A DNA stretch of 64,000 bases. Source: Macrostomum lignano. Taxonomy: Eukaryota. Below the pieces are notes generated by a model. It did not search any database and was not told the DNA's origin. It was given only the letters and a program-made list of their open reading frames with translations. The first letter of the stretch is position 1. Each line of letters begins with the position of its first letter. This document shows positions 1-44,439 of this stretch, in pieces. The translations under genes and the position numbers were made by a program. The stretch lies in assembly GCA_002269645.1 (NCBI GenBank), contig NIVC01000581.1:310001-374000 (forward strand), in the 5' to 3' direction.

Positions 1-121
1 GATCTCCCAACGGTGGCTGGGCGTATCGCACACCCAAAAACTCCGATATTGTGTTATTGTCCGTGGTCAGCACTGTGCTTCCAACAACTGTGCCATAGCC
101 GCTTACTGAGACATTATAGTT
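1..121 (-). other. Start of COesterase-fold domain 8 (type B), runs off window
   Basis: Hand translation NYNVSVSGYGTVVGSTVLTTDNNTISEFLGVRYAQPPLGD matches the starts of domains 4 and 6. Confidence 0.8.
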
Positions 122-3100
122 CCGAATTGCAGTCCTCGTTCTTCTCGGGATGATCCTGTCAGATTTGGGAGCCTCATTGGTGGTAACGTCAGGCAGAGAC
201 AGCGCGGACTTCCGTCGCAGTGGTTCGGGCGACTTCTTTGCACTTTTCACCAGGCCATCGACATACGGCAGATCATAGTACCAGACTCCGCAGCGTTGAA
301 TAGTGCTGGCTCCTTCGGTGGCATTGTAGCGATCACTATAGAGGTTGTTGTAGTCGGCGTAGTCCCATACTCCGAGTTTTGTTGTCTGCCAGGATGGATC
401 TAAAGTGTTTGGGACGTGGTTTGCATTATTCATCTTGCATATCATGAAATAATTTGAATTTTTAAGAGACATTTGTATTTTTTACTCACTTGGCTTGCCG
501 TCCTTTACGAACTTGACAATGTCGCGCATCATGCGAACGGAAAGGTTTCTGTGCGATTCTGGGTAGGCGATGCCAGTGCCCGCCGGAATGCCAAAGAAGT
601 AGCGCAGATCGGCCTGATGGTCTGAGCCCAGTTGCATTCGATCAGTATCCCATGGGTCTCGAGCAGTAAACACGTACAGGTAGGTCTCAGTGCTGGTCTG
701 GTTCCGGCCCTTCTGCACGATTGTCTCCCACACAGGGCAAAGGAAATAGCGATCTCCGACTGCCTGGCCCCAGGTGTTAAGCAGAGTCTGCTTGTCGGGA
801 CTGCCGATGTAGTCGTCGAAGTACAGATTGATAAAGTCCGTGCCAGTTTCGCTCAGTTTGCGAGGGAATCGCGGGTGGTAAGGGAAAGTTCGGTTGAGAA
901 GCTGAAAATGAATTACGGTTCCAATCATGAATTTTAACCGTTTGGTATTTGTAGAAAACGCACTAAAATTTGGTCAAATTACTATTTACCTGCGTGTAGG
1001 TTTCTGCATCAATGTCAGCGAGGGTTAGATTCTGGTTCACCAGGGCTTGTTCAACATAGCTTCCACCGGTGTCAGTTGTGAATCCCATTAGCATTTCAGT
1101 GTTTGACGAGCCTTGCTCCTGGTGCCTCCAAGCCTCAAGTGGGTCGCGGTTGTTGAAGAAGGCACTATCCAGCACAGGTCTAAACTCTAGAGTGAGAAGT
1201 AGCTGCAGGAATGGAGTTTGAGCGTCCACAATATTTTTAGTATCCAGAGTTTTAAGGCAGGTGATGGCCTCGGAGATATTAGTACTTGGGCAGCCAAGCG
1301 CGAGGGACACGAATGCAAGGTTCAGCTCTCGGGTGTTTTCCTTGCCTCCGTTGCTGTCGTACCAGGCCATTGGCATTGTTGGCGAGCCACCCATCATGAT
1401 CGCTCGCTTGAAATTCTGCTTCGATGCGGTGATGCTGTGGAATCCAACGGCTGCTGCTCCGATGCCGTGGCCAGCTAGTGCAATGTTCTCGGGGTCTCCA
1501 CCGAACATGCTGATGTACCTCTTCACCTCGTTCAACGCCAGACGCTGATCCAACAAACCCATGTTTCCAGGAAGCTCGCTATCGCTAAGATATAGGAAGC
1601 CGAATGCGCCCAGCCGGTAGGCCACAGTGACTAGAACAACATCCTCGTACGAGAGAAGATTCTCACCGAACAGTTCGCGCTGACTGATGGAGCCGGATTC
1701 AAAGTTCCCGCCGTGAAGGTAAACAATCACTGGGTAGTTGCGTCCTTGAACTGCACCGGGCGTCCAGATGTTTAGGTACAGACAGTCTTCAGAGTATGCT
1801 ACACCAAGAGTGCGATTGTCTTGTGGACAAGCATGAGGCAGCGTTTGAGCAATAAATGTGCCCGGACTGTTGGGAATAGCTCTCGGCGGAGCAAATCGGA
1901 GGTCTCCGACAGGAGGTTCCGCATACGGCACGCCCAGAAATCGAGAGATGTTCTTCATTCCGTTTGGTGTGAGAACGCGATGTCCGACGATTGAAAGGTC
2001 AGGAGTGATGGAAGCCGTGGCATTTCCGACAACCGTGCCGTCTGGTCCGATTGGAGGCCGCGTTGGTGGTGCAGTTGGTGGCGGCGTGGTGCCCGTGTCA
2101 TTCAAGCTGTTCACATACGGCAGTATCTCGTCCCAGAATCCGCACTGCTGTCGCCTGTAACCGTCCTTGTACATCCTTGGTGGTAGGTTGTCAGCATCCA
2201 GAAGCAGATGCGATTTGTTGGACGCGTCGTACCGTTCCCAAGGTATCGCGCCGCCAGGCTCGCCGTTTCTAGCAAAATTGACGATCGACTGCATAATTTC
2301 GTCGGACAGCTCGCGCTGCTCATCAGGTCTTGCAGGGCCCGGGCTTGACGGATTGCCGAACACGTAGAACGCGTCTTCGACTAAAATTTATTAATGGACG
2401 TGCAAGAGAATTTGAACACGAAAAGTTAAACTTCTTTACCCGGTATCATTTTTAATATAAAAAACTGCTTAAAAATTTGTAATTAGCAGTGATAATTTTT
2501 ATTTTGTAGTATTCTATCATGAAAGTACATTCTTGTAGATTTTTCTTATGTACTTCAGTATACGGTTACATTTGTTATTTTGGTTTTGGGAAATTACCAT
2601 TCTTGAAGATACCATGATAGTAAATATCTAAAATTCATTCATATGCTTTATAATCCGAAGGTTCAACTCACAAAGGCTAGCGTGCAGCAGTGGAAGTTCT
2701 GACTCCTCATATTCATTGCCCTCTGTGAACAGATAGTTGTAGACTGGCTGGCTGGAAGCTTTGGAGTAGGCGTCAAGGAACTTGTTGTTAGCGCATGTAT
2801 AGTAGCGGTCACTGATGGCGAGGCCCAGGTCTCTGATATCACGCTCGAAATTGCCCTGTCCGTTGTACTGCATGAAGTGGTTGCGCAGGCCATTTCTGCC
2901 GGCAGTCGTCATTGACTTCGGAAACCGCGGAAAATACTCGGTCATGCGCTGTAGAGTCTGAAAAACAGAAAGAAAATTCGAAAGTTACAGATCACGAAAT
3001 AATGTTAATTAATATGGTTAAGCTCAAGTCAAGTACAAACCTGGAGATAAACAGCATGAGTGAAGTTCCCCGGTGTCAAAAGAAGACCGTCAGTGGCTCT

Positions 3101-6100
3101 CTCCAGAAGGAAATTTCCAGGTCGGTCCACTCCACCAAAGATCATGGGCACCTGCATCAGTGAGCTCGGGTTTACAGTCCAAGGATCGCTTGAAATGAAA
3201 TCACCATCGACCACTGGTGGAAACTCAATTCGCTGGAACAACTGTTGGAACACTCCCTGCTGCTCATTGATCTCATTGGCAGACAGGCCGCGAATGCAAG
3301 ACAGCAGCTCAGCCCCCTGGCAGCGGAGCCTGGTTCGAACAAAAGTCACTTGCAACTCTCGCGCCTCCTCGGTATCGTTCGTCAGCGGGTAGGACATGTA
3401 CGGAGAGCCGGTCATGAGGACGACCTGGTGAAACCGGTTCTGCCCTGGCCTGGCCATATGGTAACCGATCGACACGGCGCCAGCCTCCACGCCCATCAGG
3501 GTGATGCGGTTCTTGTTGCCGCCGAAGCTCTCAATGTTATCGGCCACCCACTGCAAGGCCATCTCCTGATCCCACAGACCGTAGTTTCCGATCACCTCCT
3601 TGTTGTCGAGGGACAAGAAGCCAAACACACCTAAACGGTAGTTGATGGTAACCACGACTGCGTCATGGTGATCCAGGATCATGCTTCCCTGCCAACGATC
3701 TTCGCCAACGCTTCCAACTTCAAAGAAACCTCCGTGAAGGAAAACTAGCACAGGCAGATTGGTGACATCTCTACCCTCTCGCTTCGGAGTCCAGACGTTG
3801 AGATAGAGGCAGTCTTCGGACATTGTGAAATTGTAATTCTGCATCTGCATACAAGCTGGCGGCATCTGTTGTGCAATGTGCTGTGTATCTGCAAAAAATA
3901 TTAGAATTAGACAGTCTGTAAACCTACACGCTTGATTATTTATAAACCATAATAAAGGCTTGAAATCCCACCTGATGTTGTGGAAGGCTTAACCGGCTTA
4001 GCCAACCGAAGATTTCCTACGGGTGGCTGTGCGAACGGAATTCCAAGGAAGTGAGACATTGTGACATTTGAGATTGTTCTTATGGTGTGTCCACGAACGT
4101 GACCGAAGTCAGGAACCTGAATAGTGTAATTCGCAATGACTTCGTGCACATTGAACGGTGTGGCGCGCTGAGGCTGCAAGTTGGGTGTCCTGGCCGGCCG
4201 CTCGCCACTGCTAGCGAGCAGTTTGACAAAGTTTTCTTCCTCGCTTGCTGTCGTAGTCGGGACCAGCGTGTTCACGTAGGGCAGCTCATTCTTCCAGACC
4301 GGGCAGCGGCCACTGTTTAGACCGAAGCCGTCGCCAACCATGACTGAGATCACGTTTCCAGCACCGCCTGAGTCTGGCAGAACAACGTCGTACAGCAGGA
4401 AGTCTGAGTTTTGGAAGCTCGTTCGGTTCCAGCGGGCAGGAGCTAAAGAAAAAACAGACTTAGTTTTAGAGCAAGCACAAAATGAAGCACCAAAAAACAG
4501 TAACAAAACCATTAAATGATCCTAGGAAAGCTCACCTGATCCACCAATATACTGAACAAAGTCGTCCATCATCAGTCGAGACAGATCCTTGTGAACCTCC
4601 GGATATCCATCTAGCCTCATGGGCTCGCCAAACAGGTAGCGGATGTCGCCCCAGTGGTCAGCGCCGATCAGGCCCTCCTGCGCCCTGAACGGGTCCTCCA
4701 CATCTAGGTAGTACATGTGAATGTCGTGCTGCTTGTCCCTCAGAAGGTCGCTTGTGGCCTCCCAGATGGGGCACAGGAAATTGAAGTCACCCATCGCCCT
4801 CGACCAGATGGCCTTGATCCGCTCGTTGTAGTCGTAGTAGTTCCACTCGGTGAGGGCCAGCTTGAGGAATTGAATTCCAGTAGCCGTGTTCCTTTCCGGG
4901 AAGCGAGGGAAGTAGTTAAACTGCAGCTCCACGATCTGAAAGGTATTCAAGAAAAGGTATGGCATCGATGCTTCTTTCGTTTAATAAAGGATTTTTGGAT
5001 TTTATAGTGCAAGCTGTTTCACCTTTTATAGTGAAACAGAGGTATGGTAAGTTGCTCACCCTTTCGAAAATAGTTCGGTTCAGCGACTCCCAGGAAATGT
5101 TCCTTCGAGCCAGCGACTGCTCGATGTAGTAGCGACCAGAGTCTGAGCCCACGCCTGTCATGTACGGCTTGTCCATCTCGCCCTTCCACCAGCGATCATA
5201 TGGATGGGTGTGGTTGAAAAACGACTGGTTGAACACGGGCAGGAACACCAAGTGATCTCTCGAGTGCTGCATGTTAAGCTGTTCCGTCATGATCCTATCC
5301 AATGTAAGGTTTCTCAGACATTCCAAAACCGAATCAAGTGGGCCTCTTGCGCAGTCAAGCTGAACATTGACAAAATGCTCGCTATCTTCAAGAACCTCTT
5401 GGGTCGAGCTCGACCAAGCCAGCGGCATCGACGGAGATCCGCCCATCAAGATCATCCGGTCGAAGAAGTCCTTCGAATCCGTGACAGCGTGGAAGCCAGC
5501 CGACGCGGCGTCCGTCCCGTGACCCATCAGAGTAATCTGCGTCCTGCTGCCTCCAAAGAAGGGGATCACTCTTTGGATGAAGTCGAGAGCAAGCCGTTGG
5601 TCCATCAGACCGAAGTTTCCGGGCAGCTTCTCGTCGTCCAGGAACAGGAAGCCGAGCGCGCCCAGTCGGTAGTTGACCGTGATGAGAATGACGTCCTCGT
5701 TCTCGAGAAGCTGCTCACCTCGATACTCTGGCAGACTGTTAGCTCCACTCGTGTAGTTGCCGCCATGCAGGAACACTGCTGTTGGATAACTTCTGGACGT
5801 GTCGCGCGGTGCCCAAATGTTCAGGTACAGACAATCCTCAGACATGCTTCCTCCTGGAACTGGATTGATGGTTTGTGGACAGGCCGGCGGCATTGTCTTT
5901 GCTGTGTAGTTGCCACCCTTTGGTAATGAAGCCTGGCTCCACCGAGTGAGTGGCATTTCCGCGTAGGGCAGACCCAGGAATCGCTTGATGATCTTTCCGT
6001 TTGGCAGTCGCACCAAGTCTCCGGCGATGCTGATCCTGTTTTGCGTTCTTCCGAGGTCGATTTCAATGATGATTTCCTCAATAATGCCGCCATCGGGACC

Positions 6101-9100
6101 GATCGGAGGTCTGGTCGGCGGCGGCGCAGTATCGTTCAGGCTGTTGACGAACGGTAAAGTGTGGTCCCAGAAGCCACACTCCTGTCTCCTGTACCCATCA
6201 GGATACATCGTCGGAGGGAGATGGTCGGCGTCGAGCAGCAGATGAGACTTCTTCTCAGAGTCGTACGGGTCCCATTTCAAAAGGTCAGATGGACTGCCGG
6301 TTCGGGCAAACTGAACGATGGCGTGCATGATGGCGTCGGACAGCCGCCGCTGTTGGTCTGGCACAATTGGACCGGGGCTGGAGGGATTGCCAAACACATA
6401 GAATGCGTCCTCGACTGAAAGGGAAAAATTAATAAGTGTTGCAGATTCTTAAGTTTTTTAAGTTTACGAGCTTAAGCAGTTTGACTTTAAAATGCTGTGA
6501 GAGAAAACGAAAATCAATACTGCAGCTTTCGACTCACAAAGACTTGCATGCTGCAGGGGAAGCTCTGTGTCTCCCTTGTATTCCTTGCCCTCAGTGAACA
6601 GATAATTGTAAACAGGCTTGCCCGAGGCTTTGGAGTACGCATCAAGGAACTTGTTATTCGCGCAGGTGAAGTAGCGATCGCTGAGCGCTAGTCCTAGGTC
6701 TCTGAGATCCCGCTCAAAATTGCCCTGTCCATTGTACTGCATGAAGTGGTTGCGCAGGCCCGTCCGCCCGGACACAGTCATGCTCTTGGGGTATCTCGGG
6801 AAGAATTCGTTCATACTTTGCAGAATCTAAAAGTTCAGAGCACCGACTTGTTCTTTTGGATTGAATTAAAGTGTGCGGTTTTTGCGACGTCCTGAGCAAA
6901 AAATATTAAAATTATGAGTAGGAGCTATTTAAGCGCATCCATTACTTTTTATTTAATGATACGTAAGAAAACTTAGAAAAAATTTGTCTTTATAGGTAAA
7001 AAATACGTGAGCAAAATTCCTGACACAATTTAATTTCCAGATTGCATAAAACTTTAAAGAGAATTACTCACCGTTAAGTACGCGTTATGACTAAAGTTCT
7101 CTGGCACAAGGATCTCAGTGTCCACCAGTCTTTCGATAAACGTGTTTCCAGGTCGGTCCACTCCTCCAAAGATCATGGGCACCTGCATCAGTGTGCTCGG
7201 GTCCATCGTCCAAGGATCCAACCTGATGAAGTCACCATCAATAATGGGTGGGAATTCAAGCCGCTGGAACAGTTGCTGGAACACGTCCTGCTGCTCATTA
7301 ATTGAATCAGCCGGTTGACTCCGAATGCACTCTAGAGCTTCAGCTGGGTCGACTGGGCATCGCAATCTTCGCAAAAAGCTGTATTGCAGGTCACGAACTT
7401 CCTCAATGTCATCCGACAGCGGGTAGGACATGTACGGAGAGCCGGTCATGAGGACGACCTGGTGAAACCGGTTCTGCTTTGGCCTGGCCATGTGGTAACC
7501 GATCGACACGGCGCCAGCCTCCACGCCCATCAGGGTGATGCGGTTCTTGTTGCCGCCGAAGCTCTCAATGTTATCGGCCACCCACTGCAAAGCCATCTCC
7601 TGATCCCACAGACCGTAGTTTCCGATCACCTCCTTGTTGTCGAGTGACAGGAAGCCGAAAGCTCCAAGACGATAGTTCATGGTAACCACGACTGCATCGT
7701 AGTGATCCAAGATCATGCTTCCCTGCCAGCGATCCTCGCTAATACCTCCGACTTCAAAAAAGCCTCCATGAATAAAAACAAGCACGGAGATGTCATTCAC
7801 GTTCCTGCCAGCGCGTCTTGGAGTCCAAATATTGAGGTAGAGACAATCCTCAGACATGTTCCGGTTGTGATGCTCTCTCTGGATGCACATTGGCGGCATT
7901 GTCAGTGCCAAATGCTTTGAGTCTGGAATTGAGATATAAAAATGTTTAGGTTAAATGCATTGTTTTATATGGAGTAACTATTATAAATTTGGCTCAAAAT
8001 TAATGAAAATGTGCACCTGATGTTGTATGTGGCTTCACTGGCTTTGCCAATCGACGATTTCCGACAGGCGGCTGCGCATACCGAACTCCGAGAAACTGGG
8101 ACATGGTGATATTGTTCGACAGAGTCATGATGGTCTGCCCCGTCACCTTGCCGAAGCCGGGAACGTCCACAGTATAGTTCGACACGACTTCGTAGAGATT
8201 AAACTCCGATTCGTCTTTTACGCTGCTGGTCTTTCCGATTGCTGGTCGCTTTCTGCTTGCACTGACGGTTATTTTCGAAGTCTCTTCTTCCTGGAAGGGG
8301 GCGCTGACAAACGATTTGACGTAGGGCAGCTCGTTTTTCCAGAGCGGGCACCGGCCAGTGTTCAGGCCGAAACCGTCCGGCACCATGACAGAGACCAGGT
8401 TTCCCGGACCGCCGGAGTCCGTTTGCAGGATGTCGTACAGTAGAAAGTCTGACGTCTCCTGGCTTGTTGCATTCCAGTGAGATGGTGCTGCAAATTGGGA
8501 AGACAGCTTGCTCTGTACATGAAGTTAATAATCTGTACAGCACTTAATAATTTGCCACTAAAGACAAATTTCGAGCACGAGCAATAGTAATTTACTGTAA
8601 AACTGTTGCATGTTATTCTTACCAGAGTACCCGCCAGTGGCTTAACTTAATCGACATATTTTTTCGTTTTGTTTTTACAATATTTGATCAGTTGATGTTT
8701 TGGCAATGCTTGGTACAGATTGCCTCCTAAAATATTCTATTTTTCGGTCTTTTTATTGCTGATTATAAGGATCACAAAGGAAAACTACGAGTTGAGAGTT
8801 TGTGAGATTAAAAATACTGTTTTTAAATAATTTGAGCAAAACTGAAAACTAATCAATACGAGGGTAGCTCGAATAAAGATGTGTATAAAGAAGCTTTTAA
8901 AGTAATCCTAGTATTAATAGCTTTATCAGAGGACTATCAAGTGGTCATTTAAACAAACTCTACAGAACAGCATGAACGATATGTCTGATTTTTTAACTTT
9001 TCTTGCATATTGGTAGTCAATAGCTAGCTCGTACAAAAATATTTTTTCAAACTTTGATTAAAACACTGTTTAAAACTACGCTACGAGTACGATGCTTAAA

Positions 9101-12100
9101 TTGAATTTATGGCCAACCAAGCATTTAAGATGGACACAATATGCATTTCGGTTTAAAAGTCAGTGGTCCAGGTTTTCTTTACTCCTATCTTCTGTTTTTC
9201 TTCTTATGCAGAAATTCTGCTGACGAAAGTCTTTCTTTGAAATAGGAAATAATTGAAAATAAAATCGTACTACGCTTCCCTAACGTTTTTTGGCTCTCAC
9301 CTGATCCCCCAATGTACTGGACAAAGTCGTGCATCATCAGTCGGGAAAGGTTCTTGTGAACCTCCGGGTACAAATCCTTCCTGAGCGGCTCGCCAAACAG
9401 GTAGCGGATGTCGCCCCAGTGGTCAGCACCGATCAGATCCTCCTGTACCCGCAACGGGTCCTCCACATCTATGTAGTACATGTGAATGTCGTGCTGTTTG
9501 GCCCTCAGTAGGTCGCTCGTGGCCTCCCAGATGGGGCACAGAAAGTTAAAGTCACCCATCGCCCTGGACCAGATAGCCTTGATCCGCTTGTTGTAGTCGT
9601 AGTAGTTCCACTCAGTGAGGGCCAGCTTGAGGAATTGAATTCCGGTAGCCGTGTTCCTCTCCGGGAAGCGGGGGAAGTAGTTAAACTGCAGCTCCACGAT
9701 CTGGAACGTTTGCCATTTGCATTTCAATCATATTCTCAATGAGTTATTATGTTTTCCGTTATTTTAAATAGCTCAAAACAGTTAGTTTTTCTTACCCTTT
9801 CGAAAATAGTTCGGTTCAGCGACTCCCAGGAGATGTTCCGTCGAGCCAGCGACTGCTCGATGTAGTAGCGACCAGAGTCTGAGCCCACGCCTGTCATGTA
9901 CGGCTTGTCCATCTCGCCCTTGGACCAAGCGTCGTACGGGTGCGTGTAGTTAAAAAACGACTGATTGAACACGGGCAGGAATACCAAGTGATCTCTCGAG
10001 TGCTGCATGTTCAGCTGTTCCGTCATGATCTTATCCAATGTAAGATTTCTCAGACACTCCAAAACCGAATCAAGTGGGCCTCTTGCGCATTCGAGTTGAA
10101 CATTGACAAAATGCTCGCTATCTTCAAGAACCTTCTGAGTCGAGCTCGACCAAGCCAGCGGCATCGACGGAGATCCGCCCATCAAGATCATCCGGTCGAA
10201 GAAGTCCTTCGAATCCGTGACAGCATGGAAGCCGGCCGACGCGGCGTCCGTCCCGTGACCCATCAGAGTGATCTGCGTCCTGCTGCCTCCAAAAAAGGGA
10301 ATCACTCTTTGGATGAAGTCGAGAGCGAGCCGTTGGTCCATCAGACCGAAGTTTCCGGGCAGCTTCTCGTCGTCCAGGAACAGGAAGCCGAGCGCGCCCA
10401 GTCGGTAGTTGACGGTGATGAGAATAACGTCCTCGTTCTCGAGAAGCTGCTCACCTCGATACTCTGGCAGACTGTTAGCTCCACTCGTGTAGTTCCCACC
10501 GTGCAGGAACACTACTGTCGGGTACGTCGTTGAAGTATCGTTTGGAAAAAAGACGTTTATGTACAGACAATCCTCAGACATGCTTCTTTCCGGAACTGGA
10601 TTGATGGTTTGCGGACAGGCTGGTGGCATAGACTTCGCTGTGTAGTTGCCACCCTTCGGAAATGAAGCGTAGCTCCACCGAGTGAGAGGCATTTCCGCAT
10701 AGGGCAGACCCAGGAATCGCTTGATGATCTTTCCGTTTGCTAGTCGAACCACGTCTCCGGCGATGCTGATCCTGTTTTGCGTTCTTCCGAGGTCGATTTC
10801 AATGATGATTTCATCGATAATTTCTCCCTCTGGTCCGATCGGAGGCCTGGTTGGTTCCGGCGGCTCCTTCAGCTCATTGACGTAGGGAAGAACCTCCTGC
10901 CAGAATCCGCAGTCGTTAATCCGGAAGCCCCAATTTACCGACACATTGTGCACCTGCGCATCGAGCACAAGGTAGGGCTTTAGATTTGCCGTGTACTCCC
11001 ACCACAGGTCGAGACTGTTTTCAGGATTGGGATTTCCTGTCTTGGCGAAGTGCGTGAATAATTCGATCATCTTTTCGGACAGACTTTTCTGTTCATCGTT
11101 CCACTCAGGTCCTTGCAAAGGATTTCCGAAGAGATAGAAGGTGTCCTCGGCTGTAGAGTAGATTTGTGAATATATATTGATTTATTTGGCTTTTTTGGAT
11201 TGATTTTTTTTCGGCTGCTAATAAAAATGCAATAAAATGGCACCTACACAAGCTTGCTCCATCGGATGTAATATTTTCAACATTGGACTTCTCGGAGAAC
11301 ACATAGTGATATAGGAATGCATCAAGCGGATGCCGCTTAGAGATCACTTGCTGCAGGTATTCGTTGTTTCCGCAGGTGTAGAAGCGGTCACTATAGGCCT
11401 CACTAAGGCTGTCAATCAGCACCTGCCTATGCAGAAGCGGCGGTCGGTATTGCATCCCGATCAGCGTGGCTCCGGGCTGCTTCAGCTCCTTAGGTAGCCT
11501 CGGGTTGTAGTATGATGCGTTAACGATGTTCTGCAAGTGTTTATGGTTGCATAGTGAATTATTCATCTACGAGTACTTATAAAACTCACCCACATATTTT
11601 AGAGGCCTTACCTGCAGCACTTCATCATAAGAAATGTTTGCCAAGTCCAGCTCGCCGAAGCGAATCCTGCGGTTGATGATCTCATTTCCCGGCCTGTCGA
11701 CAAATCCGACGATCATGGGCACCTGGGACATGTCGCCCTGCTGCACCGAATGCCACGGGTCCTCCTTGAGAAAGTCTCCGTCGACTGTGACCAGGGCCTC
11801 CGGACCGAACTTGTTGGCGAACTCGTTAGTGTAGACACTGTTGATATCCGACACGGACTTGGCCCGCATGCAAGCCAACTGGGCGTCCGTGGTGCTGTTG
11901 TTGCATCCCATTAGCTGCAGGTATTGTTCGATGCGCATGCGGGTGCCATCGGTGTCGTTGTTCAGGGGATAGGCCATAGACGGACTGCCCGTCTGGAGAA
12001 TCACCCTGGAGATCCGGGTCTCGTTGCGGATCAGGTGGTAGCCAATGGACACGGCTCCGGCGTCGTCGCCCACGGCGGTGATGAGACTGGCGTTGCCACC

Positions 12101-15100
12101 GAAGTGGTGAATATTCGCCTCCACCCATTTGAGCGCCATCTCCTGATCGAAGAGGCCAAAGTTTCCGCGGCTGCCCTCGGCCGAGAAGGGCAGGAATCCC
12201 AGAACTCCCAGTCGGTAGCCGATGGTAACCACGACGACGTCCTGCAGCTCGACAATCTTCTCGCCACTCCGGTACGGATCGTTGATGCCTCCGACTTCGA
12301 AGAAGCCACCGTGAATGTACACCAGTACGGGGACCTGCTGAGACTCATTGGCTGTCAGGCTAGGTCTCGGAGTCCAGATGTTGAGGTAGAGGCAGTCCTC
12401 GTCCTCTTCCAAGGTCGTATTCCACGCCTGCGGACACGCCTTAGGCATCGTTTGCGCATCGATGGTAGCTGCAAAGTAAATTGAAGAAATAAGAATTATG
12501 CGATGCTCAACAGGAGTGCTTTTGGAATTGAGGAAAGGACTTCTACAGCTTGCAGAAGGGGCAGAAGTCGGAACTATCTGGAAGATTCTGACATTGGAAG
12601 GTCGCTGATAAAATCTAAAAGTGCATTTTTCTGTTTTGAGCGTAAATCGAAAGGCTTTAATAAATTTACTTGAAGACCCAGTGCCATTTCAAACTAATGA
12701 TGGAGTCATTAAGAGCCTGTAGCCCAAAACTACGAGCGTACCTTCCATACTACCGGTGATAAATTAATTGAAGCCAGCATGCTTTTATCCAATGCGGCTT
12801 TACAAGTTGTTGGTATTGTGATTTTTATTTGTGATTTTTCCTAAGAAATTTATTTCGACGAATTTTTCTCGTTTTGAAAGTGTCTTGTGACACACTAAAA
12901 GTGGGGGTCAAACCTCGCGCAGGCAGACTGAGACAGTTGTCTGGCTTGAGTCAGCCTCAGCCACACGCCGTCCTCTGCACAGACCTTCTGAACTGGTTTG
13001 TGCTGCCAGCACTAACCGGGTTTTGTGTACACCGCCAACCCCCCGGCTTGCGCCCACCCCCCTCCCTCGGCAGGGTTTTTATGCCTGCGGGCCAGCTGAG
13101 TTTGTGTCGCTGCGCGCTTGAAAATTTTCTAACATTGGAGCAAAATTCAAATGTTCTAAGAAGTATACTCAGCAACATTGAAAAGTCGCCACTCTATGCG
13201 CCAGTGAGCAATTTCTCTTGGACCATTCTGAAATAAAAGATGCGAGAAAACTCATCGGGGTAGCTTTAATCCGTCCAACCCTCGCACACAGCTCCCCCAC
13301 TTCATTTCTCAACTCAAGTCTGCCGCGGCGTATTTAAGTTGCGTCACTCGCAAAGATTGAGAGACTACCTGCACTCTCAAAAGCGGCGATCACAGACGGA
13401 TCTGTGATGGCGACTTTTCGATGTTGCTGAGTATATATACTGCTAGTGGTCCTTGATTAATATTGCACAGGTACATGAACAACTGTTCATATTGCACAGG
13501 TACATGAACAACTGTTCATATTGCACAGGTACATGAACTACTGTTAATATTGCACAGGTACATGAACAACTGTTAATATTGCACAGGTACATGGACAACT
13601 GTTAATATTGCACAGGTACATGAACAACGGTTAATATTGCACAGGTACATGAACAACTGTTAATATTGCACAGGTACATGAACAACTGTTAATATTGCAC
13701 AGGTACATGAACAACTGTTAATATTGCACAGGTACATGAACAACTGTTAATATTGCACAGGTACATGAACAACTGAAGCAGCGGGACGCTACACATGAAA
13801 ATCCTCCAAATTTTGAGATATGGCGAGATAGGAAGATATAGGAAATATGAGATATAGGAAGATAGGAAATAATTGCTAGCAATTATTTAAAAGCATTTTG
13901 GCAGTAGAAGGCTTTCGTTGGATGTGAGACTAAGCGCAATTTTTTAGTCTGCAAACTGTTTTATAAAAAAATGAGCTGGCTTATTCTGCTGAATCGTCAG
14001 AATATTTTTTCTCATCTTTGCTTGTGGGTTTGACTTCCAGACCGAAAACCTTGATCTGCCTCTTTTCTTGCAGCTGCAATGTTTAATGTAACTCACCGTT
14101 TGCAATGTCCTTCAGAGCCGGCTTGGCAAATCGCAGATCGCCGGTTGGCGGCTGCGCGTACGGAATGCCGAGGAATCGCTCAATCTCCTTCCCGTTCGCG
14201 GAGAGCCGGTGCCCCCTGACAGTGGCGCCGACCTCGGTGAGCTCCACAGTGGCATTGTCAATGATTTGCGCGGATGTGGGCTGGAAATTGTTGGCGGCAG
14301 CCTCTTGCTGCGGCTTCGAGCGGGCCGGCGCCGCACCGATGGTGCTGCCGTCCAGCAGAAACGGGTCCTGCCGCAGCGGGTTCATCGGCTTCGCAGAGTC
14401 GCCCGGCACGAGGCGGTTCACGAAGCTGAGAGTGTCGTACCACCAGCGGCAACGGCGGATGGCGAAGCCGCCAGTTAAGTCGTAGAGGCCGGGGTCCTGC
14501 ACCGGCAGGTAGCTGTTGTAGTTCCAGTCCCCGGCGATCACGCTGCGCCAGTTGTTGTCTGTGTGTGTGAAATCCCGGCGGTTGCCATTTAGCGCTGGGT
14601 TTGATTGGGCTGAGAGTCCGCGGGTTATTTGTCATAGGAATGCAAAGGAGGCAATGAGAGTGGGTGTGAGTTGGATTGCCCGCTGTGCTGTAGGAATGGC
14701 AGGAAATTCAGTTCATTTTGAGAAAGTGAAGGATTTGAAATTTTCTGGAATGGGCTGTTCCCTTTGAAATTCATATTCTAAACAGAAAATTTCCTCACTC
14801 GGCCTTCCGGTGGTGACAAAGTTGGCCAGATCCTCCATCATGCGCTTGGCCAGCTCGTTGTGCTCGCTCGGGTACGGGAGGCCAGGGCCGTCCGGGACGC
14901 CAAGGAAGTAGCGCACATCGTTGACGTGTCCGGGCGCCTCGTTGTCCCTAAACGGGTCCGGAGCACCGAAGTAGTACAGGTAGGCGTTCATGTCCTCTCC
15001 CGGCTGCGGCCTGTCATCATCGAACAGGGCGTAGAGGGTCGGGCAGAGAAAGCTGAAGTCGCCCAGAGCCTCGGACCATTTTTTCAGCAGCAGCTCTTTG

Positions 15101-16942
15101 TTCTGGGCGTCGTTCCACTCGGTGTGCGACAGCTGGAGGAATTTCAGCCCGGTGTCGTCCAGCTCGGTGGGGAAGCGGGGGTAGTGCACGAACTGCTGGC
15201 GCAGGATCTGCGGCGGGACGGGCGAGGTGGGGTGAGGATGAGGCTTATTGATTTACAAGTAAACGAGCAATGGAAAATAAATGTGAAAATCAACATAGCT
15301 CGTAGATTAAGTTAGATTAAATTCTTCCAACGCGTTTCGGTCCGACAAGGGCCATCTTCAGGGTCTGATTTTCACTCACTCAGGGTATTTTCACTCACTC
15401 AGGGTATTTTCACTCACTCAGGGTATTTTCACTTACTCAGGGTATTTTCACTCACGCAACAACTTTTATAAGAGATAAATAGAGAACAAATGTTTACTGT
15501 AGAATGTTCAGAATGTTCTCTGGGCAGAATGTTCAGAGTAAGTGAGCAGAGATTGCGAGTACAATGATCGGGTTGTGCCTTCACTTAGAATACCTTTAGT
15601 AAATGGCCCGCACCACTGTGAGAAAGTTGAATGTTCAGATTTGGTTTCTGGTTTTTAATGTACATGGATTCAAGTATATTGAGCCTAAAGTCAGTCCTAC
15701 AACGATCAATAATTTAAAACTGCTTAGTTTGCCCAATGTCGCAACAACTGTTGCAACAGAGCAGGTGGTCTTGGATAGCCGGATGAACAATATCCGCGGG
15801 GACATTCGCCTAGCATAGGAAAAGCTACTCACCTCGTAGTACACATCGCGGTTGAGGATGTCGGTGGTTAGGTTGCGAGTGCGCAGCGAGTTGAGGGCGA
15901 ACTCGATACCGGAGTCAGCGGTGACGCCCATCAGCAAAGTGACGTTCTTACGGCGCTCGCCCCAAGTTATTAGCGGGTCCATAAAGTTAAAGAACTCTTT
16001 GTCCAGTACGGGCATGAACTCGAGCGAAATGTAGAGCTTCTCGTAGTTCTTCTGCTCTTCGATCAGCTTCTCAATGGAGATGTCATTTCGCAGGCATTCG
16101 ATCACCTCTTGAAGCTTGCCCTCCCCACGAGCGCAGTTCAGCTGAATGTTCGCGAAGCGCTCACTAACGCCCCTCACTGCATCGATGTCGTTCGACCAGA
16201 CCAGGGGCATGAGGTGCGAGCCGCCCATCATCACCGCACGGGTGACCGGGACATCTTGAGTGGCGATGTGGAACCCGACAGAAGCGGAGCCGGTTCCGTG
16301 GCCCGCCAAAGTGATTCTGTTCGGGTCTCCGCCGAAAGAACTTATCATACTAGTGATTGTCTTCAGAGCCAGGCGCTGATCCAACAGGCCGAAGTTACCT
16401 GGCATCAGTGTCGAATCCAGGTAGAGAAAGCCGGTGGCGCCCAGTCGGTAGTTGATGGTCACAAAGACGATGTTCTGATTTCGCACGAGGGTCTCGCCCT
16501 GGTACTCCGGCTCAGCGATGCCGCCAGTCTCGAAGCGTCCACCGTGGATGTAGACCAGCACAGGGTACTTGGTACCCGAGGTGGTGTCAGGCGACCAGAT
16601 GTTCATGTACAGGCAGTCCTCGCTGTACGGCAGGCTCTTCGTGGTGTTGTCCTGCGGGCACAGCGGAGGCTGCTTTTTGGCATCGATTTGGACGTCCCTG
16701 CTGAAGTTCAGCGCTTCGGGCTTGGCGAACCGCCGGATTCCGGTGGGCGGCTGAGCGTACGGAATGCTGAGGAATCGGTGAATTTCTTTCGACTCATTTA
16801 CTCCGGAGGCGTTCACCTTCAAGCCATTGAACTCGTAGCCTTCGTAGATCACTTGAACGGTTCCGATGATTGATTCGGCATTGAAGCCGGCGCAGAAGGC
16901 CAGCAGCAGGGCTGCCGCCAGCGTTGCTTGGAGCGGCCTCAT
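1..16942 (-). CDS. Giant secreted multi-domain carboxylesterase/cholinesterase-like (alpha/beta-hydrolase) protein, >=8 tandem pseudo-enzyme domains, 3'-partial
   Basis: Exons read by hand: 16942-15833, 15207-14799, 14558-14097, 12468-11612, 11530-11248, 11150-9796, 9700-9301, 8487-8017, 7922-7072, 6826-6538, 6414-5060, 4935-4536, 4442-3972, 3888-3041, 2957-2672, 2380-990, 901-490, 399-<1. All 17 introns are GT..AG and phase-compatible. Total 12,049 nt, about 4,016 aa, with no stop. N-terminus MRPLQATLAAALLLAFCAG is signal-peptide-like. Each domain has FLG(I/V/L)(P/R)(Y/F)AxxP, EDCLY(L/M/I)N(I/V), HGG and GN(F/Y/M)GL.DQ. Confidence 0.9.
251..2024 (-). other. COesterase-fold domain 7 (type A), elbow GHGIG
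   Basis: FLGVPYAEPP, SEDCLYLNIW, ALAGHGIGAAAVGFH (1458-1472), DHQADLRYFFG, RCGVW (hand translation of 399-251). Confidence 0.85.
2103..4131 (-). other. COesterase-fold domain 6 (type B, paralog of domain 4), elbow GVEAG
   Basis: FLGIPFAQPP, SEDCLYLNVW, GVEAG at 3479-3493, QCGFW. Confidence 0.85.
4267..6075 (-). other. COesterase-fold domain 5 (type A, near copy of domain 3), elbow GHGTD
   Basis: Near-identical protein and DNA to domain 3; elbow at 5510-5524. Confidence 0.85.
6137..8180 (-). other. COesterase-fold domain 4 (type B), elbow GVEAG
   Basis: FLGVRYAQPP, SEDCLYLNIW, TLMGVEAGAVSIGYH (7513-7527), FEDAFYVFGNP, ECGFW. Confidence 0.85.
8315..10810 (-). other. COesterase-fold domain 3 (type A), elbow GHGTD
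   Basis: FLGLPYAEMP, SEDCLYINVF, TLMGHGTDAASAGFH (10246-10260), DHWGDIRYLFG, RCPLW. Confidence 0.85.
13166..13433. mobile_element. 268-bp Tc1/mariner-type MITE in intron 3
   Basis: TIR TACTCAGCAACATTGAAAAGTCGCC at 13166 and its reverse complement (1 mismatch) ending at 13433; TA on both flanks. Confidence 0.8.
13461..13775. repeat. 29-bp minisatellite, ~11 copies
   Basis: unit tattgcacaggtacatgaacaactgtt(a/c)a. Confidence 0.95.
15322..15365 (-). ncRNA. Minimal type I hammerhead-ribozyme-like motif (Penelope-type), probably degenerate
   Basis: Minus strand reads CC-CTGAAGA-TGGCCCTTGTCGGACC-GAAA-CGCG-TT-GGAAGAA: CUGANGA and GAAA cores, a GG..CC stem II, a palindromic ACGCGT stem III and a GUU triplet. 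Stem I pairs only weakly. Confidence 0.5.
15371..15455. repeat. 19-bp tandem repeat, ~4 copies
   Basis: unit tcactcactcagggtattt. Confidence 0.9.
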
Positions 16943-18622
16943 TCTCCCAGTGGGTTCGAGGTCGCCAAAAAACTGGTTCGCAGTTCGGACTCGCGGCTTC
17001 GGCGACATTTATCAGCTGCTGTTGGGGTTTTATCGCGGCTGCCATGACGACGGAACAACAAATAGGCCGGGCGGTAAACGCCTCTCGCTGCTAGCTGGCA
17101 CTGGTCGAGGCCAGGCCAGGTGAATTTTGGCTGTCTGAAAATTATTTTGAGCGTGCGTCAACGCATTGCAGAGAGGGGTAAGCGGCACAGCCACCGGCAC
17201 TTGAACTTTTTGACTGGTTGCCCGAGAGGGGCAGCTCTGATCACCTGCTGCTCTGCTGATAGCGCCAGCCACATAATGCCACTGGAATCTTTTATCTTCA
17301 CTTTCGAGTTTTCTATCTGCAACTTGAATGCATTGCTTGAAAAAGTGGCGCTATGGTTTTTATCACCCGCGGGCGAAACCAGCGACTTCACCCACTGGCC
17401 TCACCACGAAAGTTAAAAATCAAAATGAAGATTAGAAGAAGCTCGTTTGGACAAAAAGAGATCGCAGAAACGGCTTTCAGTTTCAGCAAATAGTTACCGT
17501 TGCTATGGTAAGATTTTCTTACGTGTATCGAGAATGGTGGGCGACAGGTGAAGCAAAGTGAAGTACAGCAACACAAGCAAGCGAGCCCAGAAGTACATGG
17601 AGCTGAACGATTCAATTCGGGGCTGTTCGACCCATCGCTGGATGCTGCAAGATTGGCTTGAAGATCGCTGCAATAAGCATCAAAAGCTACTCGTATAATT
17701 CTGGAATCCCCTACCCGCCACCCTAATATACATTGCGTGTACATTTGCATGCACTTTAAAGTATAAAGCAGTACCGAAGACCAACGACGATGCAAATACG
17801 TTGCGACTCGCTGCACAGCATTAAATTTGTCTAATCAATGAAAATGCGCATTCTTCGGCTTTTAGTCGAGTCGAAAGTTCAAAATCGTCTCCAAGGCAAT
17901 TCCTATATTTACAGGCAGCAGTCGCGTCTTATCAGCTCGAAAGTCTCCTCTTCTTCTCGATCCGACGCCGATCTCGGCAGCTTTTTGCTGTCTCCTTATC
18001 TTCCCACCGCGCCCTACTGCTATTTGAGATCATTCTAGAATCTGCAACTGAACACTGATAAGACGGTTCGATCAGCTAAGGAGTTCGCACGAGCTTCTTT
18101 TAATCAGAGCTGCCATGCAGTTTGCCATGAAGATGCGCAGAAATTTTCTTTTGACTAAGTCAAGTCAGTAGAACAGGCATTTTCAAATTGAAAAAAAGTT
18201 TTTTCCACGCAAAACCCGATCGCTAGGATTCGAATCGTGGCGTTTTTGTGTTTTAGGAATCAAAAAACTCCAAGAAGGCAGACAACCCAAATACGCGATT
18301 ACGATTGCACAATTTTATAAGCACCAATTCAAAATTCCACGTCAGCGCAGACAAACACCAGAAAATCGAGTGAGTAACGTTTGAGTAGCGTTTCAAACGG
18401 CGAGTGGTATTATTTACATGTACAAGTACTTCTCTTGAAACGTTAAGTCCAGTTTTAAGACTACATGTAGCGAGGGGGGCTACTTAAAAGAGAGAGAATC
18501 TTAGTTTGAATCAGACGTGCGCTTTAATACGCGTAAAGTTATATTTAGTGATATAAAATGAAAGCAACCAAGCCCTTTATCTTCATCGGAGCTGTACATG
18601 TGTATGAATGGGGAAAGAATAA

Positions 18623-26711: not shown

Positions 26712-29333
<2,622 letters not shown>

Positions 29334-43922: not shown

Positions 43923-44439
43923 GGAGCACGGATTCGAACTCACGGCTAGCCCGGCACTACCATGGGGGCTGGAAACAGGCGAGAGACTGGGGATCTGAGG
44001 TTGGGGAAGCGAAGTCTGCAGCTCAACTTGAGCAGTCAGGCTTGAGCTCAGCAGGCAGCGGCGCACAGCCCTGCGCTCTCCGCGCTTTTTAGCCGCTTTT
44101 CAACTGTGGGAGGCCCCAGCCAATCAGCCAAGCCGTCGGGAGAGCGCCGCCATCCCGTGCCAACTGGTTGGGAAAAAGAGCCCTTCTGCAGCTCAGGAAA
44201 TTAACCCATGAAAGCTTTTGAATGCAGAAGTAGTAATATTGGTGAGAATGCGAGAGCGAAGCCAGACAGTGTACAAGTGCTTGTACACTGTACACTGTAC
44301 AGTGCTGCTCAAGTGCCTGCTGTTTTTATTACACAAATACATTTTTATTACAACCGACAGCTCAGCCGCAGCTATTGCGCAGCGCGCATCTGAAAGCTGC
44401 CTACGGCTGTTCAGTCCAAGGCCTGGAGTGGGGGCGCCA

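What the first reader, a model, noticed from the sequence alone, without database searches (positions are those of the whole stretch)
1..16942. One gene encodes a >4,000-aa secreted chain of at least eight cholinesterase-fold domains
Seen: the ORF track shows many esterase-like fragments that look like a gene cluster. However, all 17 intervening gaps have GT/AG ends with matching phases, and several exons (11150-9796, 6414-5060, 2380-990, 14558-14097, 8487-8017, 4442-3972, 399-1) carry the end of one domain and the start of the next in a single frame. There is one signal peptide, at domain 1, and no stop before the window edge. Known: type-B carboxylesterase/cholinesterase domains (~550 aa) normally occur once per protein (AChE, neuroligin, neurotactin, gliotactin, the thyroglobulin ChEL domain). 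Tandem-domain precedents I know are in other folds (lactase-phlorizin hydrolase, phospholipase B). I know of no described 8+ domain COesterase polyprotein. Inference: a giant extracellular scaffold, adhesion, mucus or ligand-binding protein, i.e. a candidate new system.
Basis: partly seen in the sequence, partly recalled or inferred. Interest (0 to 1): 0.95.

Follow-up and report, generated by a model that had tools for sequence, protein, structure and literature searches.

The report
Eight-domain cholinesterase-like flatworm membrane protein
One flatworm (Macrostomum lignano) gene strings eight enzymatically dead cholinesterase-like domains into a single membrane-anchored surface protein of about 4,700 residues, an architecture that sits unnamed in sequence databases but that I could not find described in any paper.

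Summary
On the minus strand, 18 exons joined by 17 GT-AG introns give one open frame from the ATG at 16942 to the window edge. That is 4,016 aa, with seven complete PF00135 domains and the start of an eighth. Seven exons carry the end of one domain, a linker and the start of the next.

The window is Macrostomum lignano. A 96-98% identical copy in GenBank assembly GCA_002269645.1 keeps every intron and supplies the missing 3' end. The eighth domain is the last. It is followed by a 79-aa Ser/Thr/Pro stalk, one transmembrane helix and a roughly 65-aa tail ending in STDL. The full protein is 4,684 aa.

Domains alternate between two subtypes, as (A-B)x4. All have lost the catalytic Ser and Glu and the choline-binding loop, but all keep the six disulfide cysteines. 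Purifying selection is strong (dN/dS 0.09-0.16).

So this is a membrane-anchored, non-catalytic surface protein with neuroligin-like topology, not a freely secreted chain. It arose by internal triplication of a two-domain A-B gene that still exists in the same genome. Public, unnamed gene models already fuse these domains, though they undercount them. Predicted 2-4-domain relatives exist in other phyla. It is a new variant of a known kind.

The parts
1..16942 (-). Coding part of the gene inside the window: ATG at 16942, 18 exons, 17 introns, 4,016 aa. It is cut by the window edge inside exon 18.
   Evidence: Model built. The start codon was fixed by the in-frame stop in the L003 copy. All exon lengths and splice sites are conserved in L003.
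15833..16942 (-). Exon 1: signal peptide (16942-16877, MRPLQATLAAALLLAFCAGFNA) and most of domain 1 (type A).
   Evidence: The GenBank CDS of the L003 copy starts at the same Met.
14799..15207 (-). Exon 2 (domain 1, type-A middle exon; 409 nt, ends in phase 1).
   Evidence: It is homologous to exons 7, 12 and 17, and to exon 2 of the paralog P0127.
14097..14558 (-). Exon 3: A-to-B junction exon (tail of domain 1, linker, start of domain 2).
13457..13775 (.). 29-bp x 11 minisatellite inside intron 3, the only long intron (1628 nt).
11612..12468 (-). Exon 4 (domain 2 core, type B).
11248..11530 (-). Exon 5 (domain 2, type-B middle exon; donor T|GTAGGT).
   Evidence: The same join is present in P0121.
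9796..11150 (-). Exon 6: B-to-A junction exon (tail of domain 2, Pro-rich linker PPEPTRPPIGPEG, most of domain 3).
9301..9700 (-). Exon 7 (domain 3).
8017..8487 (-). Exon 8: A-to-B junction exon (domain 3 to domain 4).
7072..7922 (-). Exon 9 (domain 4 core).
6538..6826 (-). Exon 10 (domain 4).
5060..6414 (-). Exon 11: B-to-A junction exon (domain 4 to domain 5).
4536..4935 (-). Exon 12 (domain 5).
3972..4442 (-). Exon 13: A-to-B junction exon (domain 5 to domain 6).
3041..3888 (-). Exon 14 (domain 6 core).
2672..2957 (-). Exon 15 (domain 6).
990..2380 (-). Exon 16: B-to-A junction exon (domain 6 to domain 7).
490..901 (-). Exon 17 (domain 7).
1..399 (-). Exon 18, truncated by the window edge: A-to-B junction exon (tail of domain 7, linker, first 81 aa of domain 8). 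The rest of the gene lies outside the window and is read from locus L003 at 27219-29484. That part holds 42 more nt of exon 18, exons 19-21, the rest of domain 8, the stalk, the transmembrane helix, the tail and the stop codon.
4531..6125 (-). Stretch 88% identical in DNA, intron included, to 9296-10864. This is domain 5 against domain 3, and is a likely gene-conversion tract or younger duplication within the array.
   Evidence: dS is 0.37 for D3/D5 but 1.38 for D4/D6.

Best explanation
This is a single Macrostomum lignano gene with 21 exons, 18 of them in the window. It encodes a 4,684-aa type I membrane glycoprotein.

The layout is a signal peptide, then eight cholinesterase-like (PF00135) domains in strict A-B-A-B-A-B-A-B order, then a 79-aa Ser/Thr/Pro-rich stalk, one transmembrane helix, and a roughly 65-aa cytoplasmic tail ending in STDL.

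Shown here:
- The gene structure and the domain count.
- Loss of the nucleophile Ser (replaced by G, D, G, E, G, E, G, E) and of the acid Glu in every domain.
- Loss of the His in the B-type domains.
- Deletion of the Cys-loop segment that carries the choline-binding Trp.
- Retention of all three disulfides.
- Strong purifying selection.
- Origin by in-frame tandem amplification of a two-domain (A-B)-stalk-TM gene. That gene survives as a paralog in the same genome with the same intron positions and phases.

Inferred:
- The protein does not hydrolyse esters or bind choline esters.
- It works as a cell-surface scaffold, adhesion molecule or receptor. Its cholinesterase-like domains would act as protein-binding and dimerising modules, as in neuroligins, gliotactin, neurotactin, glutactin and the thyroglobulin ChEL domain.
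- Each A-B pair plausibly folds back into an intrachain pseudo-dimer through the alpha3(7,8)/alpha10 four-helix bundle used by cholinesterase and neuroligin dimers. That would give about four bead-like modules held away from the membrane on a glycosylated stalk.
- The C-terminal T-D-L may dock to PDZ proteins.
For: One gene:
- 17 GT-AG introns with matching phases and no stop codon.
- Seven exons span domain boundaries.
- Exon GC is 0.548 and intron GC is 0.367.
- There is only one N-terminal hydrophobic leader.
- All splice sites and exon lengths are conserved in a second copy, L003. Between the two copies exons are 98.2% identical and introns 77% identical, with dN/dS 0.09.
- The GenBank CDS P0412 on L003 runs from the same Met to the stop after the transmembrane helix. 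That annotation was derived from RNA-seq transcript assemblies, cut at experimentally detected trans-splice and poly(A) sites (PMC5730564).

Domains:
- Pfam finds 7 stretches in the window and 8 in the full model.
- A/B alternation is seen in pairwise identities: A-A 38-40%, B-B 36-38%, A-B 27-34%. A/B-specific HMMs agree.

Dead active sites and kept disulfides: alignment with AChEs, 6 Cys per domain.

Selection: dN/dS is 0.16 for D3/D5 and 0.15 for D4/D6.

3' end: stalk with 70% S/T/P, and a transmembrane segment with a Kyte-Doolittle maximum of 2.83.

Origin: paralog P0127 has the layout SP-A-B-stalk-TM. Its exons 1, 2, 3, 7 and 8 match the window's unit in length class and phase.

Organism: P0413 is named M. 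lignano and is 95% identical. L003 comes from GCA_002269645.1.

Dimerising role of the fold: PMC5943944.
Against: - The stalk, transmembrane helix, tail and stop were read from a 96-98% identical copy, not from the window itself. The window copy could in principle differ downstream.
- No full-length cDNA was seen. The transcript-derived GenBank model lacks exactly one A-B unit (1,122 aa). I attribute this to a collapse across a 150-nt identical stretch. An isoform or a copy-number difference cannot be formally excluded.
- Function is inferred from topology and from relatives only. No expression site, partner or phenotype is known.
- The pseudo-dimer model was not tested. The tools give no inter-domain contacts.
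- Several A-to-B linkers contain basic motifs (RPAR, RRTR, SRKR) that could be convertase sites, which would favour a processed polyprotein.
Confidence: 0.8

Rival explanations
1. A tandem cluster of separate single-domain esterase genes that only looks fused. The units would be resolved by internal promoters, spliced-leader trans-splicing or polyadenylation.
For: M. lignano trans-splices 38.8% of its genes, and many of its transcriptional units are polycistronic. Fused gene models of true tandem arrays do occur elsewhere. Lineus P0123 repeats a Met plus signal peptide at every unit.
Against: - Every boundary lies inside an exon, with no stop, no Met-plus-leader and no acceptor between domains.
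- There is one hydrophobic leader in 4,684 aa.
- Downstream units would lack a start codon and a signal peptide.
- The boundary-aware transcriptome annotation did not cut the unit.
Confidence: 0.03
2. An assembly artefact: a two-domain gene inflated by mis-assembled repeats.
For: - The genome is more than half repetitive, and the assembly is redundant.
- D3/D5 are 88-89% identical.
- Public models disagree in length: 2,356, 3,380 and 3,558 aa.
Against: - The units are far from identical. A-A is 38-40% except D3/D5, and B-B is 36-38% except D4/D6 at 71%. They cannot be copies of one unit.
- Two independent, 2-4% divergent sequences (the window and L003) show the same 8-domain order and introns.
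- The shorter public models are explained by collapses and skips at identical stretches.
Confidence: 0.02
3. A polyprotein precursor. The chain is made as one product and then cut at the linkers by proprotein convertases, releasing soluble one- or two-domain cholinesterase-like proteins. Candidate uses are extracellular matrix, mucus or secretion.
For: The A-to-B linkers carry basic motifs: SASRKRP (D3-D4), ERPART (D5-D6), PRRTRT (D7-D8) and APARSK (D1-D2). These were read from the model sequence.
Against: - Only two of the four motifs fit the minimal R-x-x-R rule.
- The paralog P0127 has no such motif in its linker.
- The B-to-A linkers are Pro-rich, without basic sites.
- The conserved transmembrane anchor and cytoplasmic tail argue for a surface-retained product, although shedding is possible.
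Confidence: 0.1
4. A stoichiometric ligand sink or bioscavenger. The dead esterase pockets would still bind small esters, organophosphates or lipids, multiplied eightfold.
For: Non-catalytic esterases can sequester ligands (general knowledge). A-type domains keep the His, and the HGG oxyanion-hole motif is kept.
Against: - Ser and Glu are lost in all eight domains.
- A 12-13-residue deletion removes the Cys-loop segment with the choline-binding Trp in all seven domains aligned.
- Nucleophile replacements include the charged residues D and E.
Confidence: 0.05

Closest known systems
Neuroligins, and the other cholinesterase-like adhesion molecules gliotactin and neurotactin
   Same: - Non-catalytic cholinesterase-like ectodomain with the three cholinesterase disulfides.
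- N-glycosylated.
- O-glycosylation-type stalk, single transmembrane helix and short cytoplasmic tail.
- The C-terminus fits a class I PDZ-ligand pattern (STDL here; TTRV in neuroligins, from my own knowledge).
   Different: - Eight domains per chain instead of one.
- By sequence the domains are nearest to AChE/BChE. All but one of the best 60 PDB matches in each of two searches are AChE, BChE or cholinesterase, and no neuroligin appears among them.
- No evidence of neurexin binding or of neural expression.
Macrostomum lignano two-domain paralogs (PAA79323.1 = P0127, PAA79327.1 = P0264, A0A1I8I8B3 = P0131)
   Same: - Same A-then-B subtype order.
- Same motifs (GHG.. in A, G.EAG in B, YFPRFP, LPYVN).
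- Same intron positions and phases.
- Same stalk-TM-tail ending.
- Same species.
   Different: One A-B unit (1,232 aa) against four. Only about 35-40% identical. The paralog's B core is split into three exons. The A-to-B linker is poly-Pro.
Acetylcholinesterase and butyrylcholinesterase
   Same: Best sequence matches (E about 1e-61 to solved structures). Same fold, same disulfides, and the same C-terminal helix region (C.FW..LP).
   Different: No Ser-Glu-His triad, a shortened Cys (omega) loop without the choline-binding Trp, multi-domain, and membrane-spanning.
Thyroglobulin ChEL domain and Drosophila glutactin
   Same: Use of a dead cholinesterase fold as a structural or dimerising module in a very large secreted-pathway glycoprotein.
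   Different: Thyroglobulin has one ChEL domain after unrelated Tg repeats. Glutactin has one domain and is a soluble basement-membrane protein. Pfam finds no other domain type here.
Predicted multi-COesterase proteins of other phyla. Examples are Styela clava XP_077968891.1 (4 domains plus TM), the echinoderm/hemichordate 2-domain plus TM 'uncharacterized proteins' (Acanthaster XP_022079595.1, Lytechinus, Diadema, Saccoglossus, Glandiceps), and Solemya and Saccostrea 3-domain proteins
   Same: Several cholinesterase-fold domains in one chain without internal signal peptides. Several end in a transmembrane helix. All are uncharacterised.
   Different: - 2-4 domains, not 8.
- Many of their domains keep GESAG-type serines.
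- They do not show the A/B subtype signature, so they are probably independent fusions.
- In Styela the first domain boundary coincides with an exon boundary and the second linker is spread over three exons, unlike the single junction exons here.
Lactase-phlorizin hydrolase
   Same: A type I membrane protein built from tandem copies of one enzyme fold. Some of the copies are inactive.
   Different: Unrelated fold. It retains catalytic domains, and its pro-region is removed.

Membership tests
Type-B carboxylesterase/lipase fold (Pfam PF00135 COesterase) | Profile match above the curated gathering score | tested here: met
   E=0. 2351 bits with 7 stretches in the window's protein. 2693 bits with 8 stretches in the full model. 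The cut-off is 27 bits.
Type-B carboxylesterase/lipase fold (Pfam PF00135 COesterase) | The six cysteines of the three cholinesterase disulfides | tested here: met
   C73, C88, C248, C261, C403 and C521 are invariant across 7 domains and 4 reference cholinesterases. There are exactly 6 Cys per domain, D8 included.
Active cholinesterases/carboxylesterases | Ser-Glu-His catalytic triad (G-E-S-A-G nucleophile elbow) | tested here: not met
   The Ser position is G, D, G, E, G, E, G, E in D1-D8. The Glu position is S/P/S/P/S/P/T in D1-D7. His is kept only in A-type domains, with Leu in B-type.
Active cholinesterases/carboxylesterases | Cys (omega) loop with the choline-binding Trp | tested here: not met
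   A 12-13-residue deletion relative to four cholinesterases removes the ..EMWNP.. segment in all seven aligned domains (columns 150-175).
Cholinesterase-like adhesion molecules (neuroligin type) | Non-catalytic cholinesterase-like ectodomain | tested here: met
Cholinesterase-like adhesion molecules (neuroligin type) | One cholinesterase-like domain per chain | tested here: not met
   Eight domains.
Cholinesterase-like adhesion molecules (neuroligin type) | Stalk, single transmembrane helix and cytoplasmic tail (type I topology) | tested here: met
   Seen in the 96-98% identical copy L003, outside the window. The stalk is 79 aa and 70% S/T/P. The transmembrane segment has a Kyte-Doolittle maximum of 2.83. 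A 94-aa TM-plus-tail segment follows the stalk.
Cholinesterase-like adhesion molecules (neuroligin type) | C-terminal PDZ-binding motif | tested here: inconclusive
   The chain ends in S-T-D-L, which fits the S/T-x-hydrophobic class I pattern.
Cholinesterase-like adhesion molecules (neuroligin type) | Binding to neurexin or another defined partner; closest sequence relatives are neuroligins | not testable with these tools
   Partner binding cannot be tested here. On sequence, no neuroligin appears among the best 60 PDB matches in either search. All but one of those matches are AChE, BChE or cholinesterase.
Macrostomum A-B didomain cholinesterase-like membrane proteins (P0127/P0264/P0131) | A-type domain followed by B-type domain | tested here: met
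   Subtype HMM scores for P0127 are A 228 / B 94, then A 288 / B 399. The window gene shows the same alternation four times.
Macrostomum A-B didomain cholinesterase-like membrane proteins (P0127/P0264/P0131) | Shared intron positions and phases | tested here: met
   P0127 exons of 1038, 388, 414, [252+291+302], 295 and 410 nt have start phases 0, 0, 1, 1, 0, 1. The window unit has about 1176, 400-412, 462-471, 848-857 and 283-289 nt, then the junction exon, with the same phases.
Thyroglobulin-type proteins | ChEL domain preceded by thyroglobulin type-1/2/3 repeats | tested here: not met
   Pfam reports only COesterase and overlapping alpha/beta-hydrolase families.

The most novel reading that the evidence does not exclude
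The (A-B)x4 chain is a new kind of giant surface receptor or adhesin. In this reading each A-B pair is an obligate intrachain heterodimer that copies the cholinesterase/neuroligin four-helix-bundle dimer. Four such pseudo-dimers then form a semi-rigid rod projecting tens of nanometres from the membrane. Two-, three- and four-domain cholinesterase-like membrane proteins, unnoticed so far in tunicates, echinoderms, hemichordates and molluscs, would be independent solutions of the same type. That would make 'tandem ChE-like' proteins a widespread, unstudied class of metazoan cell-surface molecules.
Probability: 0.3. Interest if true: 0.75.

Novelty: new variant of a known kind. Interest (0 to 1): 0.55.

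Why it matters
Every studied cholinesterase-fold protein carries one such domain per chain and pairs it with a second chain through a four-helix bundle. A chain with eight dead copies in a strict two-type alternation is the largest array I found. The profile search of 1.84 billion cluster representatives gave nothing comparable.

It offers a natural test of whether the fold's dimer interface can be internalised as an A:B pair. It also shows how a neuroligin-like receptor can be lengthened by exon-unit amplification.

It is also a practical warning. Three public models of this gene are each wrong in a different way, because of near-identical repeats.

M. lignano has in situ hybridisation, RNAi and transgenesis (transgenesis: PMC5730564; the others from general knowledge). 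The function is therefore directly testable.

Tried and rejected
1. The search for homologous proteins with one junction exon and with the D8 core returned only single-domain proteins at 50% identity or less. In those calls no hit was longer than about 1.75 times the query. The tool seems to limit candidate length, so these searches could not see multi-domain proteins. A 4,038-aa query did find them.

2. Exact look-ups of two window ORFs found nothing.

A profile of the three contiguous junction exons was used instead.

4. Apparent synteny between the window (44351-44599) and the gene upstream of the paralog in L001 turned out to be a roughly 250-bp non-coding interspersed repeat that matches in all frames.

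5. My exact spliced mapper timed out on P0412. It was replaced by k-mer block chaining.

6. Rfam gave no hit in the window.

7. Four literature searches for tandem or multiple cholinesterase or carboxylesterase domains, or for a Macrostomum esterase, found nothing relevant. A search for a named homolog in Macrostomum was also empty.

8. Structure prediction was not run. The tool returns no inter-domain contacts, so it could not test the pseudo-dimer idea. The fold itself is not in doubt.
Full report
**Observation**

On the minus strand of 1-17008 the long open segments all translate to type-B carboxylesterase/cholinesterase sequence.

Each is followed by GT(A/G)AG, except 399-1, which runs off the window. 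Each is open in one frame. Each reads ...FGNP...C.FW..LPYV(N/K/D), then a linker, then ...FLG(I/V/L)PYA.PP... That is the C-terminus of one domain followed by the N-terminus of the next, with no stop, no Met and no leader between them.

An exhaustive donor/acceptor search between consecutive coding segments, guided by the paralogous units, gave a unique consistent chain of 18 exons and 17 GT-AG introns (81-1628 nt, most of them 81-125 nt). The phases match and there is no stop. Exons have 54.8% GC (GC3 67.6%) and introns 36.7%.

Pfam finds seven full COesterase stretches (E=0, 2351 bits). The eighth domain is cut by the window edge after 81 aa.

**Organism and the missing end**

Searches with short queries saw only single-domain cholinesterases at 50% identity or less. 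A profile of the three B-to-A junction exons, run against 1.84 billion cluster representatives, put a 3,380-aa protein with 8 matched stretches on top. This is P0121 (2750 bits; name masked, because the window encodes it). Next came multi-domain proteins of other animals.

P0121 is collinear with my model. Its three aligned blocks are 96.1-98.2% identical over 4,155 columns, and most of the shortfall is gaps. It uses the same exon joins.

A search with the whole model returned two further models of the gene. P0413 is named Macrostomum lignano and is 95% identical. P0412 has 3,558 aa. P0412 lies on scaffold NIVC01001098.1 of GenBank assembly GCA_002269645.1 (locus L003).

L003 is collinear with window 17640..1 at 96-98% nucleotide identity. 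It continues 12 kb beyond the window edge. Every window exon projects onto L003 with the same length and with AG/GT intact. The only exception is exon 3, which is 6 nt longer and stays in frame.

Downstream, L003 supplies the last 42 nt of exon 18 and three more exons, ending at a stop codon. L003 has a stop between the first ATG (window 17008) and the second one. The start is therefore the Met at window 16942. The GenBank CDS begins there as well.

The full product has 4,684 aa and eight Pfam COesterase stretches. After domain 8 come three elements:
- A 79-aa stalk that is 70% Ser/Thr/Pro.
- A transmembrane helix, FYALVTVIPILGVALIGLAIFVVVKVVMG (Kyte-Doolittle maximum 2.83).
- An Ala-rich, acidic tail of about 65 aa ending in EGSTDL.

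**Is it one gene?**

Beyond the junction exons, the single leader and the two collinear copies, selection is informative. Between the window copy and L003, dS is 0.062 and dN is 0.0056, so dN/dS is 0.09 over 10 kb of coding sequence. The exons are 98.2% identical, against 77% for the introns. Between the youngest internal duplicates, dN/dS is 0.16 (D3/D5) and 0.15 (D4/D6).

The GenBank annotation of this assembly was made from RNA-seq-based transcript assemblies. Those were cut at experimentally detected trans-splice and poly(A) sites and then run through TransDecoder (PMC5730564). The annotated CDS P0412 runs from the signal-peptide Met to the stop after the transmembrane helix. That is RNA-level support for one mature mRNA.

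P0412 equals my model at residues 1-1932 plus 3055-4684. It lacks exactly 1,122 aa, which is one A-B period. The jump lies inside exons 9 and 14, directly after 150 nt that are identical in both, and there is no GT/AG at the jump. I read this as a repeat collapse, not an intron. P0121 and P0413 show other skips of the same sort.

**Anatomy of the domains**

Domain starts recur every 551-578 aa. Odd (A) and even (B) domains form two subtypes:
- A-A pairs are 38-40% identical, except D3/D5 at 89%.
- B-B pairs are 36-38% identical, except D4/D6 at 71%.
- A-B pairs are 27-34% identical.

Each subtype has its own exon pattern. B-to-A linkers are short and Pro-rich (PPPTRPPIGPDG). A-to-B linkers are longer and charged.

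Aligned with four cholinesterases:
- The nucleophile Ser is G, D, G, E, G, E, G in D1-D7. D8 has E.
- The acid Glu is S/P/S/P/S/P/T.
- The His survives only in A-type domains.
- A 12-13-residue deletion removes the Cys-loop segment that carries the choline-binding Trp.
- The six disulfide cysteines are invariant. Each domain has exactly six Cys.

There are 64 N-x-S/T sequons before the transmembrane helix. The nearest solved structures for both subtypes are AChE and BChE (E about 1e-61). No neuroligin appears among the best 60 matches of either search.

**Origin**

With A- and B-specific HMMs, only M. lignano proteins show an A-then-B pattern. These are P0127/P0264 (PAA79323.1, PAA79327.1), P0131/P0241 and a fragment, P0247 (A0A1I8FL08), which was named.

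P0127 has the layout signal peptide, A, poly-Pro linker, B, Thr/Pro stalk, transmembrane helix, tail. Its gene (locus L001) has nine exons. Their positions and phases match the window's unit. The exception is its B core, which is split in three.

The giant gene is therefore an in-frame, head-to-tail amplification of such a didomain gene. The B-tail exon and the A-first exon, minus its leader, are fused into one junction exon.

D3/D5 are much younger in dS (0.37) than D4/D6 (1.38). An 88%-identical DNA tract, intron included, covers exactly D5 against D3. This points to gene conversion or a staggered duplication.

**Mechanism**

Shown: a type I membrane glycoprotein with eight catalytically dead cholinesterase-like domains, under purifying selection.

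Inferred from established knowledge of the family: non-catalytic members (neuroligins, gliotactin, neurotactin, glutactin, the thyroglobulin ChEL domain) use the fold for protein binding and for dimerisation through the alpha3(7,8)/alpha10 four-helix bundle (PMC5943944). By analogy, this protein would be a surface scaffold, adhesion molecule or receptor.

The strict A-B alternation, together with an ancestral gene that had exactly one A and one B, suggests that each pair forms an intrachain pseudo-dimer. That would give four modules on a glycosylated stalk. The T-D-L C-terminus fits a class I PDZ ligand. None of this last layer was testable here.

**Rivals**

- Separate genes, and an assembly artefact, are essentially excluded.
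- A processed polyprotein is possible. There are basic motifs in A-to-B linkers (RPAR, RRTR, SRKR). But the anchor and the paralog's linker argue against it.
- A ligand sink is unlikely, given the gutted active site.

**Comparison and novelty**

No paper in the searchable library mentions tandem cholinesterase or carboxylesterase domains. The structural review of partnerships of this fold does not use the word 'tandem'.

Yet predicted multi-domain proteins are not rare:
- Styela clava has a 4-domain plus TM protein. In its 36-exon gene the first domain boundary coincides with an exon boundary and the second linker is spread over three exons.
- Echinoderms and hemichordates share a roughly 1,170-1,200-aa 2-domain plus TM family.
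- Solemya and Saccostrea have 3-domain chains.

Some long models are fusion artefacts. Lineus P0123 has a signal peptide at each unit. None of these proteins has the A/B signature. None approaches eight domains among the best 150 of 39,910 matches.

I therefore class the finding as a new variant of a known kind. It is real, unusually large, undescribed in the literature and experimentally tractable. But it is not a new system, and it is not absent from databases.

Noticed in passing
L003:19751 and 23791 (equivalent to window exons 9 and 14, 7922-7072 and 3888-3041): The GenBank CDS of this gene (P0412, 3,558 aa) omits exactly one A-B unit (1,122 aa). The jump sits mid-exon, right after 150 nt that are identical in D4 and D6, and has no GT/AG. 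I read it as a repeat-collapse error in the public annotation. The two UniProt models (3,380 and 2,356 aa) have other skips.
   Followed up: yes
window 4531-6125 versus 9296-10864: Domain 5 and domain 3 are 88% identical in DNA, intron included (dS 0.37). Their partner domains 6 and 4 are only 73% identical (dS 1.38). This suggests gene conversion or a staggered duplication inside the array.
   Followed up: partly
window 13457-13775: A 29-bp x 11 minisatellite (97% matches) lies inside the only long intron (intron 3) of the gene.
   Followed up: no
window 26766-27359 and 27481-27996 (+): Two exons of a Ser/Thr protein kinase (Pfam Pkinase, 1e-35 and 4e-29). By eye the sequence resembles a ribosomal S6 kinase.
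   Followed up: partly
window 18800-19246 (+): Remnant of a DDE_3 (Tc1/mariner-type) transposase, about 1.8 kb upstream of the gene's start.
   Followed up: partly
window 32576-35416 (+): An intact 946-aa ORF with no Pfam match and no exact record in the gene-position collection. It may belong to a mobile element.
   Followed up: partly
window 37342-38991 (+): A 549-aa ORF whose C-terminal half is a 48-bp x 11.5 tandem repeat (98% matches). The repeat encodes the 16-aa unit SALRSGGTDQSSSTET.
   Followed up: no
window 39600-63200: This stretch is unusually dense in minisatellites. Tandem Repeats Finder gives 23 rows here, some overlapping, with periods mostly of 12-56 bp, up to 83 copies and 55-64% GC. 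This fits the published figure that simple and tandem repeats make up 15% of the M. lignano genome.
   Followed up: partly
window 44351-44599; L001:6363-6602: A roughly 250-bp interspersed repeat, 86% identical between the window and the scaffold that carries the two-domain paralog. It matches in all reading frames, so it is non-coding.
   Followed up: yes
window 53818-54522 (-): A weak RhoGEF-domain match (E 3e-4, below Pfam's cut-off) in a 234-aa ORF. It may be an exon of another gene.
   Followed up: no
proteins P0134, P0135, P0139, P0144, P0148, P0149 (not in the window): Echinoderms and hemichordates share an uncharacterised family of about 1,170-1,200 aa with two cholinesterase-like domains and a C-terminal transmembrane helix. 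In the members read, the first domain tends to keep a GESAG-type serine and the second has lost it.
   Followed up: partly
protein P0123 (Lineus longissimus XP_064631732.1): This 2,475-aa '4-domain' RefSeq model repeats a Met plus signal peptide at the start of each unit. It is probably a fusion of tandem single-domain genes. It is a useful negative control for the architecture claim.
   Followed up: partly
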